A stretch of DNA of 64,000 nucleotides, taken from positions 186,001 through 250,000 of the IMG/VR virus record IMGVR_UViG_3300042923_000569. The stretch is one strand, 5' to 3'. Below, piece after piece: positions 3,505-53,155 of the stretch (the stretch's first letter is position 1; each line of letters begins with the position of its first letter). The translations under genes and the position numbers were made by a program. The notes under the pieces were generated by a model that was not told the origin of the DNA, made no database searches, and saw only the letters and a program-made list of their open reading frames with translations.

Positions 3505-3871
3505 CCATACACCTTAAGTATTCTTCAATGTCTTCACATGAATTTGCGGGTATTTTTAAACTTTTGAGATTTTTTAAAATACCAACTCCATGTAAACTAA
3601 TTCCATTATGAAATGTACATAATGAAAACTCAGTATCACCTATATTGTCGAGTATTGTACCACGCTGCCAAGTGTTGTCAACACGTTCGTATCGATTTTT
3701 TACAAAATAATAAGAATCATATCTTAAATCAACCAACGCAATCTGCGAACTATACAACATTATCTCGCGAGGAAGACGGTACGTTGATAAAAAATTCTGT
3801 GCAGTAACATTTTCAATATATGGAAGTACTAATATCGTTTTGGTATCTATGTTATTGATGTAAATTAACAT
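3464..3871 (-). CDS. hypothetical protein
   Basis: 135-aa ORF overlapping both neighbours. Confidence 0.65.
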   Translation of the reverse strand: MLIYINNIDTKTILVLPYIENVTAQNFLSTYRLPREIMLYSSQIALVDLRYDSYYFVKNRYERVDNTWQRGTILDNIGDTEFSLCTFHNGISLHGVGILKNLKSLKIPANSCEDIEEYLRCMDEIYSNVGLTWPV

Positions 3872-5283
3872 TCCAACTTCGCTAATTTTTCACGCAACAC
3901 ATGTACCGCAGATTCTTTAATCTCAAGAATTCGTTCGTATGTATCAGCAGTATTTTTATCAAAACGGAATTCAACAAATACGGGTAAGAAGATACTCATT
4001 TGACCAGTACGTTTATCTTTAGTCAATGAAGTACTTTCAACAGTGGCAATAGCACCATCAATTTCACTCCATCGTTCCATCATTGTCATTGGGGTCCATT
4101 CTACATCTTTTTCTTTAAATCCAGTACCGCATCCTACAACAATAATACCATCAGCAGATTCAAGAATTAACGATCCAATTCCACCAGCACGCTTACCTTC
4201 ACCTTCGTTATAACCAATAATACGAAGATCGAACTGCATTTTTAATTTTAGTTTTAACTGCTTAGGAGAAGTGTGTGATTTCCAAATACCAGATTCACAT
4301 TTAAGAATAGATCCTTCTTCACCTTGTTCAATCATTTCAGTGTTAAAATCAAACGCCTGACCAATATCAACACATTTGCGATATTCAACCATTCGAACGA
4401 ATTCAGACTCTAAAGTACTGATTGCTGCTTCTAGAATTTCCCGGCGTTCTTTACGTTCAACTTCCCATAAACCATTCTGGAATGCATCAAATGGTAGAAC
4501 ATCCCACAAAACAAAAACTACACGCATTGCTTCCTGTGTACTAATACTATCTTTTCCTGCTTTCTGAATAATACCGTTACCAGTTTCGCGATTTAGAATT
4601 TTACCATCATTGTCGATAACAAGACATTCGCCGTTGAATACAACACCACTGGAAAAACGATCATCATTTGCCTGGACATTCTTAGCAAGCTGAACCATAT
4701 CAGCATCTTTCATTCCTAAGAAGTCGTAAACTTTACCATTCCTTGAAGTACAAAGTAATGAATCATTCACTACTGCACTGTTTAAGTACTGTCCATCCAT
4801 TTTAACTTCAGCTACTGCGTAACCATGAGTTTTGAATGAAGTAATATTTTGGACGGTTTTTTCATTTACCAAAGAACAACGCATATAAGGCTCGTCTTTA
4901 ATAAACCCTTTACCATATACGTCATTTGCATTCTTTTCCTGAACACCACAATCGAGATTCTTTAAAACAACTTTACGAAGTACTTCAGCATCTTCTTCTG
5001 ATACAGAACCTAATAGTTCAGCAAGATATTGACGACCCGCATTACCCGTTAATTTACGAGTATATAAAACGTCAAGTGCATCAAGACCTTCTGTAAGAGT
5101 TAGTGACTTATCAGTTTCGATTGCTTCTGGTAATTTTTTAATACCACTTACAATAGAAGGCTCAAGTGCTAACTGAATTGCACGCTTAAGATCGATGTTA
5201 TTAATATTTTCGGTGAGAATATCTTTCTTTGCGTTAGTACTTGCAGTGTTTTTAATCTTTAAAATAATATCTAAAACTGACAT
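3865..5283 (-). CDS. ATP-dependent DNA ligase (T4 gp30-like)
   Basis: EVKMDG adenylation motif, NGECL, EEGSILK, C-terminal FLPVFVEFRFDK. Confidence 0.92.
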   Translation of the reverse strand: MSVLDIILKIKNTASTNAKKDILTENINNIDLKRAIQLALEPSIVSGIKKLPEAIETDKSLTLTEGLDALDVLYTRKLTGNAGRQYLAELLGSVSEEDAEVLRKVVLKNLDCGVQEKNANDVYGKGFIKDEPYMRCSLVNEKTVQNITSFKTHGYAVAEVKMDGQYLNSAVVNDSLLCTSRNGKVYDFLGMKDADMVQLAKNVQANDDRFSSGVVFNGECLVIDNDGKILNRETGNGIIQKAGKDSISTQEAMRVVFVLWDVLPFDAFQNGLWEVERKERREILEAAISTLESEFVRMVEYRKCVDIGQAFDFNTEMIEQGEEGSILKCESGIWKSHTSPKQLKLKLKMQFDLRIIGYNEGEGKRAGGIGSLILESADGIIVVGCGTGFKEKDVEWTPMTMMERWSEIDGAIATVESTSLTKDKRTGQMSIFLPVFVEFRFDKNTADTYERILEIKESAVHVLREKLAKLEC

Positions 5284-34575: not shown

Positions 34576-34681
34576 TTCGTTTACTCCGTTGCGTTTCCGA
34601 TGTAGTAATAATAGTACTTCTGAATGTTTAACGCAAGCCTTTTTTAAATTAAAAGTATAATTTTTTATTTGCTGTAGGGTA

Positions 34682-34758
34682 TTGACAGGCCACCAGCACT
34701 AAGGCATAATTAACACACAGACGGCGAAACGTCTTTGACCCATAGGGTGCGGAGCTAT
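34682..34758 (+). ncRNA. promoter-hairpin-CCCATAGGGTGC unit 1 (Chi in promoter spacer)
   Basis: TTGACA-17-CATAAT; AGACG-GCGAAA-CGTCT; motif at 34739-34750; no ORF downstream. Confidence 0.55.
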
Positions 34759-34795
34759 ATAAAAAATAAAAGTACTATCCAATAGATAGATCTAT

Positions 34796-34865
34796 GCACC
34801 CTATGGGCTTAGTGGCTGTATCTGCCAATGAGATAAGTATAGCAAAAAGGGCTGACCGAAGTCAA
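34796..34865 (-). ncRNA. promoter-hairpin-CCCATAGGGTGC unit 2
   Basis: TTGACT-18-TATACT; TGGC-AGATACA-GCCA; motif at 34796-34807. Confidence 0.55.
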
Positions 34866-34873
34866 CCCCTTTT
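34844..34873 (-). terminator. UUCG terminator with an embedded -35 box
   Basis: GGGGTTGAC-TTCG-GTCAGCCC-TTTTT. Confidence 0.7.
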
Positions 34874-34889
34874 ATGTAATTCTTTTTGG

Positions 34890-42998: not shown

Positions 42999-43110
42999 TT
43001 AAAAGTTCTCTACAAAAGTTGCCCTTTCAATGAGTGCATTCTACCAGAAATATCCTTATATGCAAGCACAATTTTAAATTAAAAATATAATGTTTATTTG
43101 CTCAACGGCA

Positions 43111-43190
43111 TTGACAGACCACCAGCAATAGGGCATAATTATCACATAGACAGCGAAATGTCTTATCCCATAGGGTGCGGAGTTGTACCT
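43111..43190 (+). ncRNA. promoter-hairpin-CCCATAGGGTGC unit 5 (Chi in spacer)
   Basis: TTGACA-17-CATAAT; AGACA-GCGAAA-TGTCT; motif at 43167-43178. Confidence 0.55.
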
Positions 43191-43249
43191 GTAATATATA
43201 AATTTAAAACAAAAATAAGTACTGGCTATTATACCAGTACTATGATATA

Positions 43250-46925: not shown

Positions 46926-47348
46926 CCTCTCAATTAAAATTAACTACTCAATAAGTTTATTATATAGTACTCGCTTGTTATTGCAAGTACTATCGAACTA
47001 CTTATTATGATTATCATTGTACAGGCGATCACATAATCGCCCATGATAAACCCGCCCATTCTTTAAACGTTTACCCAAAGGCATAAACCATTTAAGATGG
47101 AAACCAGTAAGAAAGATTATATCTTTCATTCGGAAACTTCTACAGTCCAGCCTTTATAGGCGTCGATGTAATTGATCCAGTCCTGGTCATTCCAACGGGC
47201 AGTAGTTACACCAGGAGCTTTAAACTTGTAATGTCCAGCTTTATATGCTTCCATCTTAGTCATGTATCACCTCTCAATTAAAATTAACTACTCAATAAGT
47301 TTATTATATAGTACTCGCTTGTTATTGCAAGTACTATCGAACTACTTA
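46926..47348. repeat. 79-bp perfect direct repeat of a promoter/RBS cassette (46926-47004 and 47270-47348)
   Basis: identical CCTCTCAATTAAAATT...AGTACTATCGAACTACTTA copies. Confidence 0.85.
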
Positions 47349-47747: not shown

Positions 47748-47874
47748 CTGGTAAACCTCTCAGTTAAAATTGTGTATCTCGTTTCGATATAAAAGATTAT
47801 ACGCGATTCTAGTTTATGTGCAAGTACTTTTTAAAATGAATTTATAATTATATTTTTTTAATGGGTATAACTCT

Positions 47875-47942
47875 GTACCCTATGGGCTAAGCCATTTCTC
47901 TGGCGTATGAGTACTATAACAAAAGAGGCTAACTTTCGTCAA
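47875..47942 (-). ncRNA. promoter-hairpin-motif unit 7 (CCCATAGGGTAC)
   Basis: TTGACG-18-TATAGT; GCCA-GAGAAA-TGGC. Confidence 0.5.
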
Positions 47943-47959
47943 CCCCTTTTGATAATTAA

Positions 47960-48497: not shown

Positions 48498-48941
48498 TTA
48501 TTCAACAGTTCCCGCCAGGATCTCTCCTACGCGTACCATTTCATAACGATCAACGATTGATAAAGATAGCTTAGTATCTTTTTGGCGTACACTATACCAG
48601 GTATCACCTTCAAACACATAACGGGTAATGTTTTTGTTTGCGATAAGGAACATCAACCATGATTTAGTAGTTAGTGGCTCTGTGCCAGTTTCACCACGAT
48701 CACGCCCATAAGCTACAGTATAGCCAGGAACCTTTTTATTGAAGCTGTGACCTTCTGGACACTCGATAGATTTATCCAGTACTGACAGATCACCCAGGGC
48801 GATTAGTGCCTTTGCACGTTCTGCATCGTTGTAATGCTCAACTAACATTCTACCAGTGTGACCGATATAGCCATCATAGTTTACAGATGACCAGGTAACA
48901 TGTTCGCCGTCTTTGATTGCAATAACTGCTGGAGTACCCAT
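48498..48941 (-). CDS. conserved phage early protein
   Basis: MGT...YDGY..HTG..L..HY...LI.LGDLSVL...YGRDRGE. Confidence 0.75.
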   Translation of the reverse strand: MGTPAVIAIKDGEHVTWSSVNYDGYIGHTGRMLVEHYNDAERAKALIALGDLSVLDKSIECPEGHSFNKKVPGYTVAYGRDRGETGTEPLTTKSWLMFLIANKNITRYVFEGDTWYSVRQKDTKLSLSIVDRYEMVRVGEILAGTVE

Positions 48942-49097
48942 TTTTAAATCCTCTCAATTAAAAGTAACATCGTCTCGTTTCGATATAGGTAATTATATAG
49001 TACTGGTAATCGAAAGCAAGTACTTTTTAAAATAAAAGTATAATTAAGAATCAAAAATAAATTTGCATCTAAAGAAAAATGATGATACGATGTTTAT

Positions 49098-49192
49098 GCG
49101 GCGAAAATGTGAGGTTCGCCGCAAGTCCAACGAATGATAACGCATTGTATTACTTTATAGGATAGCTATGGGTTTGCTATCCTTTTTTTTTT
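49098..49192 (+). ncRNA. candidate ~95-nt small RNA
   Basis: TTGCAT-17-TACGAT (extended -10) promoter; 8-bp 5' hairpin; unpaired core; AGGATAGC/GCTATCCT terminator plus a long T run; no ORF. Confidence 0.6.
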
Positions 49193-49207
49193 ATTTTCGA
49201 AAAGGTA

Positions 49208-49282
49208 TTGACTCCACCAGCCAAATAACCGATAATCACATCAAGACGGCGAAACGTCCTTTCCCATAGGGTGCGGAGCTAT
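49208..49282 (+). ncRNA. promoter-hairpin-CCCATAGGGTGC unit 8 (Chi in spacer)
   Basis: TTGACT-17-GATAAT; GACG-GCGAAA-CGTC; motif at 49263-49274. Confidence 0.55.
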
Positions 49283-49319
49283 GTCTTTAAAGTACTAATT
49301 TTCTTACGGGTATTCCTCT

Positions 49320-49387
49320 GCACCCTATGGGCTACGCCTTTGTCTCGGCTTGTATGTATTATTGCATTTTTCGGGGATTGAAGTCAA
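49320..49387 (-). ncRNA. promoter-hairpin-CCCATAGGGTGC unit 9
   Basis: TTGACT-18-AATAAT; GCC-GAGACAAA-GGC; motif at 49320-49331. Confidence 0.5.
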
Positions 49388-49405
49388 CCCCCGATTTGTA
49401 AAGAT

Positions 49406-49762
49406 TTATTCTTCTTGCGTTACACATTCCAGGCGGTAAGTACTGAAATGTTTACGGAATAAATCGCAAGCCTGATCGCCGTTTTCCGCTTGCATTATAA
49501 TCGAACCTTCTCGATTATTTTTAATATCGAAATATGTTACTATCCAGCCACGCGTTTTGATTTCAGATAGTGGCAAGTGAATTGATCCACCGCTGGTTAA
49601 TTGACCTTCAGGATCTTTGTTGATTGCTTCCTGGTCGATAGTCAGTGAATAGTTTTCACCATCTACAACGTGGAACAATTCAACAATCGGATCGATGTTT
49701 CCACGTTTGTTTGCGATGCGTTCCAGTGTAGAAAGTACTCCGCGAAGTTCTGATAATCTCAT
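49406..49762 (-). CDS. small early protein
   Basis: 118-aa ORF. Confidence 0.7.
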   Translation of the reverse strand: MRLSELRGVLSTLERIANKRGNIDPIVELFHVVDGENYSLTIDQEAINKDPEGQLTSGGSIHLPLSEIKTRGWIVTYFDIKNNREGSIIMQAENGDQACDLFRKHFSTYRLECVTQEE

Positions 49763-49801: not shown

Positions 49802-50203
49802 CTATACTACTTCAGAAGTAGCAAGAATATTTTCAAAGTATTCGATTAAATCACAAAGTAACTTGTAGCGAAGTTTACCAGGTTCAGAATCCATTACGCA
49901 AAGGTTACGCTGATTCCAATGTAAGTTAACAGCCCGATTAACATCATTATCAGTTAATTGCATTTCAACCGGATAACCGCAGTGTAAACCCATTTCCACA
50001 AATACAGGCTGCAAGTATTCGTGATCGATCCCGGTAACTTCACTGTTAGGAGTGTGGGCGAATACGTGCCAGCAGATACCATGCTGTCTGGTTAGGTTGA
50101 ATGATTCACCGTTGATAGTGGTGTAAGTAACATCACGATCTAAACAGTCTTTCATTGCTGTTAGTACTTTCAGGACTAAAACTGCCTGCTCTGTACGTTT
50201 CAT
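49802..50203 (-). CDS. small early protein
   Basis: start moved to MKRTEQ; GIC...YPV...R..L pattern. Confidence 0.7.
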   Translation of the reverse strand: MKRTEQAVLVLKVLTAMKDCLDRDVTYTTINGESFNLTRQHGICWHVFAHTPNSEVTGIDHEYLQPVFVEMGLHCGYPVEMQLTDNDVNRAVNLHWNQRNLCVMDSEPGKLRYKLLCDLIEYFENILATSEVV

Positions 50204-50337
50204 TGTATTGCCTCTCAATTAAAATTTGTTTTGTTTCGATACAGGGAAGTTTACACTACTCGAAAGTTTATACAAGTACTTTTATAAAATATTTTTAAAC
50301 TCTCTGTAACGCATTCTAAGCGATTTAAAGTACTGCC

Positions 50338-51683: not shown

Positions 51684-51941
51684 GTGTTCCGTGTTGATGT
51701 GGTAATAGTACACTAACCATAAAACTCTGCAAGCACTTTCTTATAAAAACTTATAACTTTTTTCATTCGTCGTTTTTCTTCCTTTATACGCGTAAAGAAA
51801 CCCACAACACATAGGAAGCATTTACAGCCCTTTAAAGTACTAATCTAAGTGTTTACCAGGCGTAATCCTCCAGCCTCTTATAGTGCGTCCTATGCGTTCC
51901 TATATAGAAGAAACTATTTTCAATCTTTTTAAAGAAAATGC

Positions 51942-52012
51942 TTGCTTCTCTGATTCAGTACTGTATAATCTTTTATATCGAAGCGAAATTCGTTATCCCA
52001 TAGGGTGCGGAG
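51942..52012 (+). ncRNA. promoter-hairpin-CCCATAGGGTGC unit 10
   Basis: TTGCTT-16-TATAAT; CGAA-GCGAAA-TTCG; motif at 51997-52008. Confidence 0.55.
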
Positions 52013-52045
52013 ATCCGTCTATTGCTTTTTTACTTTTTCCTGGGT

Positions 52046-52121
52046 ATAGCTCCGCACCCTATGGGAAAGGCCATTTCGCTGGCTTGTACGTATTATTGCA
52101 TAATTCGATCAGTACTGTCAA
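52046..52121 (-). ncRNA. promoter-hairpin-CCCATAGGGTGC unit 11
   Basis: TTGACA-18-AATAAT; GCCA-GCGAAA-TGGC; motif at 52054-52065. Confidence 0.55.
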
Positions 52122-52267
52122 CAAAAAAGAAAATTAAAATAATGCTTGATCTGGCTGGTGGCTGTGATATTATTACCCCGTCAACACGAAAAGACAGCTA
52201 TTGATTCTGCCTGGTACTAACCAGACGCGGAAGGGGAACTAATGGAAAAACGCAATGAAAAAGCGTT

Positions 52268-53075: not shown

Positions 53076-53155
53076 AGTACTGTTATGATGTTCTTAGTAC
53101 TGTTACCATACTCTTAGTACTGTTATGATGTTCTTAGTACTATATCATTACTATT
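53076..53155. repeat. 4 x 20-bp tandem repeat, each unit starting with AGTACT
   Basis: AGTACT at 53076, 53096, 53116, 53136; units 1 and 3 identical. Confidence 0.85.

What the first reader, a model, noticed from the sequence alone, without database searches (positions are those of the whole stretch)
49063..49192. Stand-alone small RNA gene with Hfq-type architecture
Seen: promoter TTGCAT-17-TACGAT with an extended -10 TG; 5' stem GCGGCGAA/TTCGCCGC; unpaired core AAGTCCAACGAATGATAACGCATTGTATTACTTT; terminator with a long U tail; no ORF; it sits directly upstream of unit 8. Inference: a base-pairing sRNA or sponge. The core ATGATAAC is complementary to the GUUAUCAU segment of enterobacterial MicA as I recall it, so an anti-sRNA role is possible, but an 8-nt match is weak.
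Basis: partly seen in the sequence, partly recalled or inferred. Interest (0 to 1): 0.6.

Follow-up and report, generated by a model that had tools for sequence, protein, structure and literature searches.

The report
Swappable small RNA gene, jumbo phage
The flagged stretch is very likely a real, independently transcribed ~90-base non-coding RNA gene of a giant bacteriophage; it belongs to an undescribed family kept at the same spot in related phages but exchanged as a block between close relatives, and its target is still unknown.

Summary
Observation confirmed. The window is part of a 358-kb Rak2/GAP32-like jumbo phage. All neighbouring protein genes lie on the - strand.

At 49063-49192 (+) there is a TTGCAT-17-TGaTACGAT promoter, an 8-bp 5' hairpin, an AU-rich core, and a terminator hairpin followed by T10. 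There is no conserved ORF. A strict promoter-plus-terminator descriptor hits only this site in the 358-kb genome, against 0 hits in 30 shuffles.

Ten syntenic loci from metagenomes and genome assemblies carry the same module, as do phages GAP32 and CBB. It always sits between an early-gene promoter and a conserved repeat unit.

- Promoter elements and the U tail are kept.
- Both stems covary: 95% paired versus 68% in shuffles, with 13 of 15 pairs changed on both sides.
- Loops and core diverge into at least 5 alleles in the window's lineage, while flanks stay 97-100% identical.
- One public run shows a 147-nt replacement joined exactly at 49045/49208.

The family is not in Rfam, and there is one copy per genome.

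The mechanism is inferred, not shown: a base-pairing RNA. Its only guaranteed target is the - strand leader it overlaps, as with lambda OOP or P22 sar. A host target through the semi-conserved AGUCCGAU and GCYUUG motifs is nearly as likely. The MicA match (8 nt) is real but is absent from three of the five alleles. No RNA-seq data exist for this phage, and Hfq binding is untested.

The parts
49063..49068 (+). -35 hexamer TTGCAT of the sRNA promoter
   Evidence: Sequence. TTGC[A/T]T is kept in all alleles of the lineage; GAP32 has TTGCGA and CBB has TTGCAC. TTGCAT is a common -35 hexamer upstream of this phage's genes.
49083..49091 (+). Extended -10 element TGaTACGAT
   Evidence: Sequence. TGnTA..AT is invariant in all 8 sequence types. 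Relative L011 has TATGAT, which is closer to consensus.
49098..49122 (+). Predicted transcript start (G at 49098, inferred from spacing) and 5' hairpin SL1, with an 8-bp stem and a 9-nt loop
   Evidence: Fold. 5 of 6 modelled pairs show changes on both sides across alleles. There are no substitutions in the stem between the window and L011.
49123..49158 (+). AU-rich core. It holds the semi-conserved motifs AGUCCAAC (49124-49131) and GCAUUG (49142-49147), a weak middle hairpin, and the MicA-complementary AUGAUAAC (49134-49141).
   Evidence: AGUCC(G/A)A(U/C) is present in alleles A, B, E and in CBB; GAP32 has AGUCUAAU. GCYUUG-like sequence is present in all types.
49159..49192 (+). Intrinsic terminator: 8-bp stem AGGAUAGC/GCUAUCCU, 9-nt loop, U tract (T10 at 49183-49192, followed by ATTTT)
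   Evidence: 7 of 8 stem pairs covary. The U tract is 7-10 nt in every allele. It is not a terminator on the - strand, where A10 precedes the hairpin and no T run follows it.
49046..49207 (.). The exchangeable cassette, meaning the whole sRNA gene. The segment is unalignable between close relatives whose flanks are 97-100% identical.
   Evidence: Alignments. Run X4 carries 147 other letters joined exactly at 49045/49208. Runs X3 and X5 carry allele A. Runs X4 and X7 have no depth over 49063-49113.
48992..49019 (-). P2, the own promoter of the downstream - strand gene 48498-48941 (TTGCTT-16-TATAAT). It is divergent from the sRNA promoter and lies back to back with it.
   Evidence: Sequence. It belongs to repeat families D3/D4/D9 of intergenic promoter cassettes.
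49208..49400 (+). 'Unit 8'. It comprises a + strand promoter TTGACT-17-GATAAT (49208-49236, with the Chi complement CCACCAGC in its spacer), a small hairpin, a long hairpin CCCATAGGGTGCGGAG / CTCTGCACCCTATGGG, and a terminal hairpin.
   Evidence: It is conserved in GAP32, CBB and BF-like phages.
49358..49387 (-). P1, a - strand promoter TTGACT-18-TGcAATAAT embedded in the terminal hairpin of unit 8. Its transcript would run leftwards through the complement of the sRNA gene towards gene 48941.
   Evidence: Promoter scan: 10 of 12 positions plus TG. No - strand terminator was found between P1 and the gene. Read-through itself is inferred, not shown.

Best explanation
This is a genuine, independently transcribed phage small RNA gene.

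- It has a sigma-70 extended -10 promoter.
- The transcript is about 85-95 nt: a protective 5' hairpin, an AU-rich core with a weak middle hairpin, and an intrinsic terminator with a long U tail.
- It is single-copy.
- It lies in the putative early (host-takeover) region of a Rak2/GAP32-like jumbo phage.
- It is transcribed against the direction of every neighbouring protein gene.

It belongs to a family that is not in Rfam. The family keeps the same cassette position in at least three lineages: between an early gene's own promoter and a conserved 'unit'. The gene is exchanged as a whole block between close relatives.

Inferred mechanism: it acts as RNA by base pairing. Its only guaranteed partner is the long - strand 5' leader that promoter P1 (49387-49358) would send through this region into gene 48498-48941. 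The most economical model is therefore a cis-antisense regulator of that read-through transcript, leading to duplex formation and then processing, decay or occlusion, as with lambda OOP or P22 sar. This model also explains how sequence can diverge freely while architecture is kept, because both partners change together.

Shown here: the sequence elements, uniqueness in the genome, positional conservation, covariation, cassette replacement, and absence of an ORF. Inferred: transcription itself, P1 read-through, pairing and its outcome.

My estimate that it is a real RNA gene is about 0.85. My estimate for the cis-antisense mechanism in particular is about 0.35-0.4.
For: - **Architecture and fold:**
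- **Uniqueness:** the only orphan promoter-plus-terminator unit among 43 intergenic strict terminators. The descriptor hits once in G000, G001, GAP32 and CBB apart from tRNA and gene ends, and 0 times in 30 shuffles.
- **Positional conservation:** ten syntenic loci from metagenomes and genome assemblies plus GAP32 and CBB carry the module at the same place.
- **Blind detection by covariance models:** a model built only from alleles B, C and E ranks the window candidate first in 6 kb with exact ends (12.2 bits, E 0.063) and finds allele D. Model R2 finds the CBB and GAP32 copies at the ends drawn by eye (E 0.078 and 0.22).
- **Covariation:** 94.8% of cells paired versus 68.1% in shuffles. 13 of 15 pairs change on both sides. 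Slid controls give 40-60%.
- **Pattern of substitutions:** window versus L011 shows 6 substitutions, none in the 32 stem positions, and one that improves the -10.
- **Co-occurrence of promoter and terminator:** units without the sRNA promoter also lack the hairpin and T run.
- **Cassette replacement:** exact boundaries at 49045/49208.
- **For the cis model:** a strong - strand promoter P1 lies upstream, and no - strand terminator lies between it and the gene. No phage trans target was found.
- **Region context:** the homologous region of CBB was proposed to be the sigma-70-driven early region (PMC5259590).
Against: - No expression data exist. None of 20 public runs that hold this DNA or part of it is an RNA run.
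- P1 read-through is inferred only.
- The promoter is a weak match to the E. coli consensus (7 of 12 positions).
- A pure cis-antisense role does not explain why single-stranded motifs (AGUCCGAU, GCYUUG) persist between genera whose stems have fully diverged. These look more like a trans seed or a protein site.
- Other units in the same genome, and BF-like phages at the syntenic site, do without the module.
- The covariation counts rest on 8 related sequences aligned to the model, which biases them towards the structure.
Confidence: 0.45

Rival explanations
1. A trans-acting, Hfq-dependent sRNA aimed at host RNA. It would be made early by host RNA polymerase and would pair through the single-stranded core (AGUCCGAU ... 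GCYUUG) with host mRNAs, or would sponge a host sRNA. The reader's anti-MicA idea is one special case. Alleles would then reflect different hosts or an arms race.
For: - Every allele has an Hfq-module-like 3' end: a U-rich stretch, a hairpin, then U7-10.
- Single-stranded motifs directly after SL1 are shared by alleles A, B and E, CBB and GAP32, although their stems differ.
- No phage target was found.
- For MicA, allele A has 8 nt and allele C has 7 nt complementary to the MicA 5' region. Local duplex energies are P 0.07 and P 0.04 against shuffles. Allele A shares AUGAUAACG with the ompA MicA site.
Against: - Alleles C and D lack AGUCC.
- Most of the core is hypervariable, which is unusual for a seed against a conserved host target.
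- The MicA match is absent in B, D and E (P 0.8-0.9). It was chosen post hoc among many sRNAs, and full-length pairing is no better than with shuffled MicA.
- The host is unknown, so no host target search was possible.
- I put the MicA case alone at about 0.05.
Confidence: 0.3
2. The act of transcription is what matters, not the RNA. In this reading, a promoter-terminator pair fires against P1 to block or collide with read-through from the upstream cassette (transcriptional interference or insulation). Its T tract may also serve as an A/T-rich upstream element for the unit promoter that follows 2-15 nt later.
For: - The orientation is convergent with P1, and the T tract directly abuts the unit -35.
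- The transcribed sequence is replaced freely.
- The region is built from promoter/terminator cassettes, like the T4-type PeSLs (PMC2839356, PMC4122927).
Against: The 5' hairpin has no role in interference, yet it is maintained by compensatory changes in every allele (5 of 6 pairs). The transcript length and three-hairpin layout are also kept. This points to selection on the RNA itself.
Confidence: 0.12
3. A protein-binding or decoy RNA, for example a mimic of a host defence RNA or a titrator of an RNA-binding protein. Hypervariable loops would track a fast-evolving host factor or a competing phage.
For: Cassette-like allelic diversity sits against near-identical flanks. The structure is conserved while the loops are variable. 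The gene lies in the early host-takeover region.
Against: - There is no similarity to any Rfam family, even at E up to 10.
- There are no tandem or CRISPR-like repeats.
- No GGA-in-loop pattern is shared by the alleles.
- Neighbouring proteins give no hint.
- The idea is purely speculative.
Confidence: 0.08
4. Not a gene. The elements would be a chance juxtaposition, a decaying remnant of a promoter and terminator, or a tiny protein gene.
For: The promoter matches the E. coli consensus poorly. There are no expression data. A 28-codon frame overlaps the region.
Against: - The descriptor gives 1 hit against 0 in shuffles.
- The module is conserved in position and architecture across genera, with covarying stems.
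- No ORF is shared by the alleles, and allele B has none of 18 codons or more.
Confidence: 0.05

Closest known systems
Phage cis-antisense RNAs with their own promoter and intrinsic terminator: lambda OOP (antisense to cII) and P22 sar (antisense to ant). Source: review PMC12197685 and my own knowledge.
   Same: A short (about 70-95 nt), stand-alone transcript from a constitutive-type sigma-70 promoter. It ends at an intrinsic terminator and is transcribed opposite to a phage message that it fully complements.
   Different: Those RNAs overlap coding or ribosome-binding sequence of a defined regulator in temperate phages. Here the overlapped RNA is only a predicted 5' leader in a presumably virulent jumbo phage. 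There is no sequence or Rfam similarity, and the gene is hypervariable and block-exchanged.
Hfq-dependent enterobacterial trans sRNAs and phage or prophage examples: DicF, and a recently reported phage sRNA that acts with Hfq (bioRxiv 10.1101/2024.10.31.621285).
   Same: A 5' stem-loop, a single-stranded AU-rich core, a U-rich stretch, and a terminator hairpin with a long U tail. Short single-stranded motifs are conserved.
   Different: No Hfq data and no target. Most of the presumed seed region is not conserved between alleles.
Prophage-encoded anti-sRNAs AgvB and AsxR of EHEC (Tree et al. 2014, PMC4104026, cited).
   Same: A phage-borne small RNA that could mimic an mRNA target site. Allele A shares AUGAUAACG with the ompA MicA site.
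   Different: Only 8 complementary nt, not conserved in the family, and nothing tested.
PeSL promoter-terminator cassettes of T4-type phages (PMC2839356, PMC4122927).
   Same: Conserved intergenic promoter and stem-loop motifs are repeated through a plastic early region. They flank segments that are swapped between close relatives with sharp boundaries.
   Different: PeSLs flank protein ORFs and are themselves the repeats. Here the swapped segment is a non-coding RNA gene on the opposite strand.
sRNAs mapped by dRNA-seq in the jumbo phage phiKZ (PMC8244752).
   Same: Non-coding transcripts in a jumbo phage.
   Different: An unrelated phage group with a different transcription system. There is no sequence relationship, and those RNAs were found experimentally.

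Membership tests
Any Rfam family (including MicA RF00078) | A covariance-model match at or near the gathering score | tested here: not met
   There were 0 matches in the window at gathering thresholds. Over 48900-49450 at E up to 10, nothing falls on 49063-49192. RF00078 has no match in the whole phage genome. There are no tRNA or tmRNA genes.
Stand-alone bacterial-type sRNA gene | Own promoter and own intrinsic terminator, outside any ORF, conserved in relatives | tested here: met
   This is sequence-level evidence only.
Stand-alone bacterial-type sRNA gene | A discrete transcript of the predicted size is made | not testable with these tools
   No RNA run holds this phage.
Hfq-dependent trans-acting sRNA | 3' Hfq module: a U-rich stretch, then a terminator hairpin, then a poly-U tail of 6 or more | tested here: met
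   All 8 sequence types have CUUUAUA, CUUCGU or UUUUGU-like stretches followed by a hairpin and U7-10.
Hfq-dependent trans-acting sRNA | A conserved single-stranded seed | tested here: inconclusive
   AGUCC(G/A)A(U/C) and GCYUUG are shared by most types, but alleles C and D lack the first motif. The rest of the core is hypervariable.
Hfq-dependent trans-acting sRNA | Binds Hfq and regulates a target in trans | not testable with these tools
   The host is unknown. No phage target was found: exact complements are no more frequent than in shuffles, and the four-genome comparative test gave P 0.69.
Cis-antisense RNA (OOP / sar type) | Transcribed opposite to, and overlapping, a sense transcript | tested here: inconclusive
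   A strong - strand promoter P1 lies 160 nt beyond the terminator, and there is no - strand terminator before gene 48941. The sense transcript itself is not shown.
Anti-sRNA / sponge of MicA | Extended complementarity to the MicA seed, conserved in the family | tested here: not met
   8 nt in allele A, 7 nt in C, and 5 nt (chance level) in B, D and E. Full-length pairing is no better than with shuffled MicA.
PeSL-like mobile regulatory cassette | Repeated promoter and stem-loop motifs flanking segments exchanged between close relatives | tested here: met
   Repeat families D1-D14. Sharp replacement boundaries. This concerns how the locus evolves, not what the RNA does.

The most novel reading that the evidence does not exclude
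The locus is a hypervariable, block-exchangeable specificity cassette. Each allele of the sRNA would recognise a different partner: either its own antisense leader, giving allele-specific control that matters when related jumbo phages co-infect (compare the P1/P7 c4 immunity RNAs), or a fast-evolving host RNA or defence component. The alleles would then be the visible trace of an RNA-level arms race in the early region of Rak2-like jumbo phages.
Probability: 0.15. Interest if true: 0.75.

Novelty: new member of a known kind. Interest (0 to 1): 0.5.

Why it matters
Regulatory RNAs of virulent jumbo phages are almost unexplored. The Rak2/GAP32/CBB group has none described, and the CBB genome paper lists promoters and terminators but no sRNA.

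This locus offers a concrete, easily testable candidate.
- One copy per genome.
- Defined ends.
- At least seven natural sequence types with covarying stems. These amount to a ready-made mutational series for asking what the RNA pairs with.

If it controls read-through into early genes, it would show antisense insulation as a design principle of these cassette-built early regions. If it targets the host, it would be an early host-takeover RNA.

It also corrects annotation. In phage CBB, the hypothetical ORFs CBB_7 and CBB_8 overlap the homologous RNA module and unit.

Tried and rejected
- **Rfam and tRNA scans:** Rfam at gathering thresholds and at E up to 10 gave nothing on the candidate, and ARAGORN found nothing.
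- **blastn against phages:** neither the near nor the distant mode hit 49063-49192. Only the downstream unit matched.
- **Exact-pattern scan of IMG/VR:** only one relative turned up.
- **RNA evidence:** no RNA run holds the phage, so expression could not be examined. Read laying was used on 1,501 bases of DNA contigs only.
- **Paralogues:** model R2 finds one copy in G000 and one in G001. The weak hits in G000, G001 and pEa_SNUABM_44 that I inspected are 3' ends of genes with their terminators and lack promoters; the weak hits elsewhere in GAP32 and CBB were not inspected individually.
- **Trans targets in the phage:**
  - Exact complements of 10 nt or more numbered 66, against 62 in shuffles. 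The longest was 13 nt, against 12-15 in shuffles.
  - A CopraRNA-like comparison of translation-start regions of orthologous genes in four genomes gave a best score no better than null (P 0.69).
  - Adjacent genes are not enriched.
- **MicA:** full-length duplex of -26.6 kcal/mol against a mean of -28.6 for shuffled MicA.
- **Small protein:** no shared ORF.
- **Neighbouring proteins:** there are no significant Pfam matches (one weak TetR_C hit, E 0.007, below Pfam's cut-off) and no PADLOC matches. The only PHROG matches are to families of unknown function.
- **CRISPR-repeat mimic or ToxI-like antitoxin:** no repeats and no conserved hairpin sequence.
- **Failed scripts:** two timed out and were rewritten.

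Full report
**Context**

The window is bases 186001-250000 of a 357,873-bp virus record with direct terminal repeats. Distant blastn and tblastn place it among the Rak2-like jumbo phages. The hits are GAP32 and CBB (Mimasvirus) and BF-like Erwinia, Serratia and Yersinia phages (Eneladusvirus).

My crude gene call gives 467 of 515 genes on the - strand. Around the finding every protein gene is on the - strand: 48498-48941, 49406-49762, 49802-50218 and others. None has a known function. The intergenic DNA is built from repeated promoter and stem-loop cassettes. For phage CBB the homologous region was proposed to be the sigma-70-driven early, host-takeover region (PMC5259590).

**The observation**

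- TTGCAT (49063-49068), a 17-nt spacer ending in TGa, and TACGAT (49086-49091).
- GCGGCGAA / TTCGCCGC (49098-49122).
- A 36-nt AU-rich core (49123-49158).
- AGGATAGC / GCTATCCT (49159-49183) and T10 (49183-49192).

The 95-nt RNA folds as predicted: -27.6 kcal/mol, z = -2.8. The promoter matches the E. coli consensus at only 7 of 12 positions and was not listed by the generic scan. However, it has the TG extension, and its -35 hexamer is one of the three most common upstream of this phage's own genes.

Among 43 intergenic strict terminators in the genome, only this one points against its upstream gene and also has an extended -10 promoter at sRNA distance. A combined descriptor hits this site alone in the genome and gave 0 hits in 30 shuffled genomes.

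**Relatives**

Through homologues of the adjacent 147-aa protein I fetched syntenic loci. Ten of them carry a long upstream intergenic region: L002, L005, L006, L008, L009, L011, L017, L018 and L019, plus the window itself. All ten have a promoter, short transcript and terminator module at the same place, between the gene's own promoter P2 and 'unit 8'.

The sequences fall into five types:
- A: window, L005, L011.
- B: L006.
- C: L002, L009, L017.
- D: L008.
- E: L018, L019.

Between types A, B, C and E, the flanks are 97-100% identical while the module is barely alignable. The exceptions are the -35 (TTGC[A/T]T), the TGnTA..AT -10 and the U tract. Public DNA runs show the same thing. X3 and X5 carry allele A. 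X4 has 147 other letters joined exactly at 49045/49208. X4 and X7 have no depth over 49063-49113.

Two phages of another genus also have the module in the analogous cassette.
- GAP32 (L033:345-462, - strand) has TTGCGA-17-TGtTATAGT, a 6-bp 5' hairpin, a core UAGUCUAAUAUAUGCCUUUG..., and a terminator plus U7.
- CBB (L034:345-459) has TTGCAC-17-TGaTATAGT, a hairpin, a core ..AAGUCCGAUAUAUGCCUUUG.., and a terminator plus U7.

The BF-like phage pEa_SNUABM_44 lacks the module at the syntenic site. There the unit promoter follows P2 directly, and there is no hairpin and T run. The same holds for three other units in the window. Promoter and terminator are therefore present together or absent together.

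**Homology and structure tests**

A covariance model built only from B, C and E (A4, R1) found D (E 0.03 to 0.0045). With filters off, it ranked the window candidate first in 6 kb with exact ends at 49098-49193 (12.2 bits, E 0.063).

R2, built from the resulting alignment, finds one copy in G000 (50 bits) and one in G001. It also picks out the CBB and GAP32 copies as the best hits in their loci (E 0.078 and 0.22).

On the clean eight-sequence alignment A8:
- 94.8% of cells pair, against 68.1% in shuffles and 40-60% when partners are slid.
- 13 of 15 pairs show changes on both sides.
- RNAalifold independently predicts the 5' hairpin and the terminator, with 12 of 14 pairs compensated.

Two caveats apply: the set is only eight related sequences, and the alignment was fitted to the model.

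Within allele A, the window and L011 differ at six positions: two in the promoter spacer, one in the -10 (towards consensus), one just before the start, one in the core and one in the terminator loop. None falls in the 32 stem positions. No ORF is shared by the alleles on either strand.

**What it is**

The evidence supports a real RNA gene. The maintained 5' hairpin argues that the RNA itself is under selection, not merely the act of transcription. The family is absent from Rfam, and I found no description of it.

**How it may work**

*Cis-antisense.* Unit 8 ends in a hairpin that carries a strong - strand promoter P1 (TTGACT-18-TGcAATAAT, 49387-49358). No - strand terminator lies between P1 and gene 48941. 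The sRNA's own terminator is unidirectional. A P1 transcript would therefore contain the exact complement of the sRNA in its roughly 360-nt leader. This gives a guaranteed target, and it explains free divergence with preserved architecture. The closest analogues are lambda OOP and P22 sar (PMC12197685).

*Trans.* Two features resemble Hfq-dependent sRNAs:
- The 3' end.
- Two single-stranded motifs, AGUCC(G/A)A(U/C) directly after the 5' hairpin and GCYUUG, which persist in types whose stems have fully diverged.

I found no phage target.
- Exact complements are no more frequent or longer than for shuffles.
- A comparative test over orthologous translation-start regions of G000, G001, GAP32 and CBB, each with its own allele, gave a best score at P 0.69.
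- Adjacent genes are not enriched.

Host targets could not be searched, because the host is unknown.

*MicA.* Using E. coli MicA from the RefSeq annotation, the 8-nt complement is real. It coincides with part of the ompA MicA site. However:
- Full-length pairing is no better than with shuffled MicA.
- Local pairing is only nominally unusual for alleles A and C (P 0.07 and 0.04).
- Alleles B, D and E have nothing.

I rate this specific idea at about 5%.

**Evolution of the locus**

The sharp boundaries lie just after the conserved AAAAGTATAAT element and just before the unit's TTGAC. Both of these belong to repeat families. This fits recombination between repeated regulatory motifs, as described for the PeSL cassettes of T4-type phages (PMC2839356, PMC4122927).

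**Verdict**

The reading as a stand-alone sRNA gene is supported. 'Hfq-type' remains a plausible description of the 3' end but is untested. The MicA link is not supported.

This is a new member, and a new small family, of a known kind: the phage-encoded sRNA. Its unusual feature is that it is exchanged as a cassette. Function remains inferred.

Noticed in passing
window 34679-34885, 43107-43205 (truncated), 47858-47955 (3' part only), 49208-49400, 51937-52130; also L033, L034, L004: The 'units' are convergent-promoter cassettes. On the + strand they run: a near-consensus promoter (TTGACA-17-CATAAT), a small hairpin GACGGCGAAACGTC, a 16-25-bp long hairpin CCCATAGGGTGCGGAG...CTCCGCACCCTATGGG, and a terminal hairpin. 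That terminal hairpin itself carries a - strand promoter, TTGACT-18-TGnTATACT or TGnAATAAT. The units are conserved across GAP32, CBB and BF-like phages. They could encode a second, roughly 150-nt antisense RNA family.
   Followed up: partly
window 4181, 18153, 33555, 34147, 34690, 36973, 42123, 43119, 46118, 46372, 49214, 51008 (CCACCAGC); 21097, 39057, 52154 (GCTGGTGG): The Chi octamer is about 13-fold over-represented in the phage: 14 plus 19 copies against about 2.5 expected. 12 of the 19 CCACCAGC copies cluster in this window. Several lie in the spacer of the + strand unit promoters, which may reflect RecBCD protection of the early region.
   Followed up: partly
whole genome G000; densest at window about 14000-54000: AGTACT occurs 991 times against about 121 expected from base composition, in coding and intergenic DNA alike. 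It is part of most intergenic repeat families (for example AAAAAGTACTTGC at - strand promoters). It could be a recognition site for a phage or host factor, or for a DNA modification.
   Followed up: partly
window 53076-53155: Tandem 20-nt repeats, each starting with AGTACTGTTA (family D16). They may be an array of binding sites.
   Followed up: no
window 46926-47004 and 47270-47348: Two 100% identical 79-nt copies lie 344 nt apart (family D13). They flank a small - strand ORF, which suggests a recent cassette duplication.
   Followed up: no
L034 193-517 (CBB record 3793-4117): The annotated hypothetical ORFs CBB_7 (sRNA strand) and CBB_8 (opposite strand) overlap the homologous sRNA module and unit. 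They have no counterpart in other alleles, so they are probably not genes.
   Followed up: partly
window 49183-49213; L033 about 340-351; L034 about 340-351: The sRNA terminator's T tract ends only 2-15 nt before the -35 of the unit promoter. It may therefore double as an A/T-rich upstream element for that promoter.
   Followed up: no
window 49098-49128 versus 49244-49260: The sRNA's start (GCGGCGAAA... then AGUCC) resembles the unit's first hairpin (GACGGCGAAACGUCC). The module may have arisen by duplication of the unit's promoter-proximal part. This rests on inspection only.
   Followed up: no
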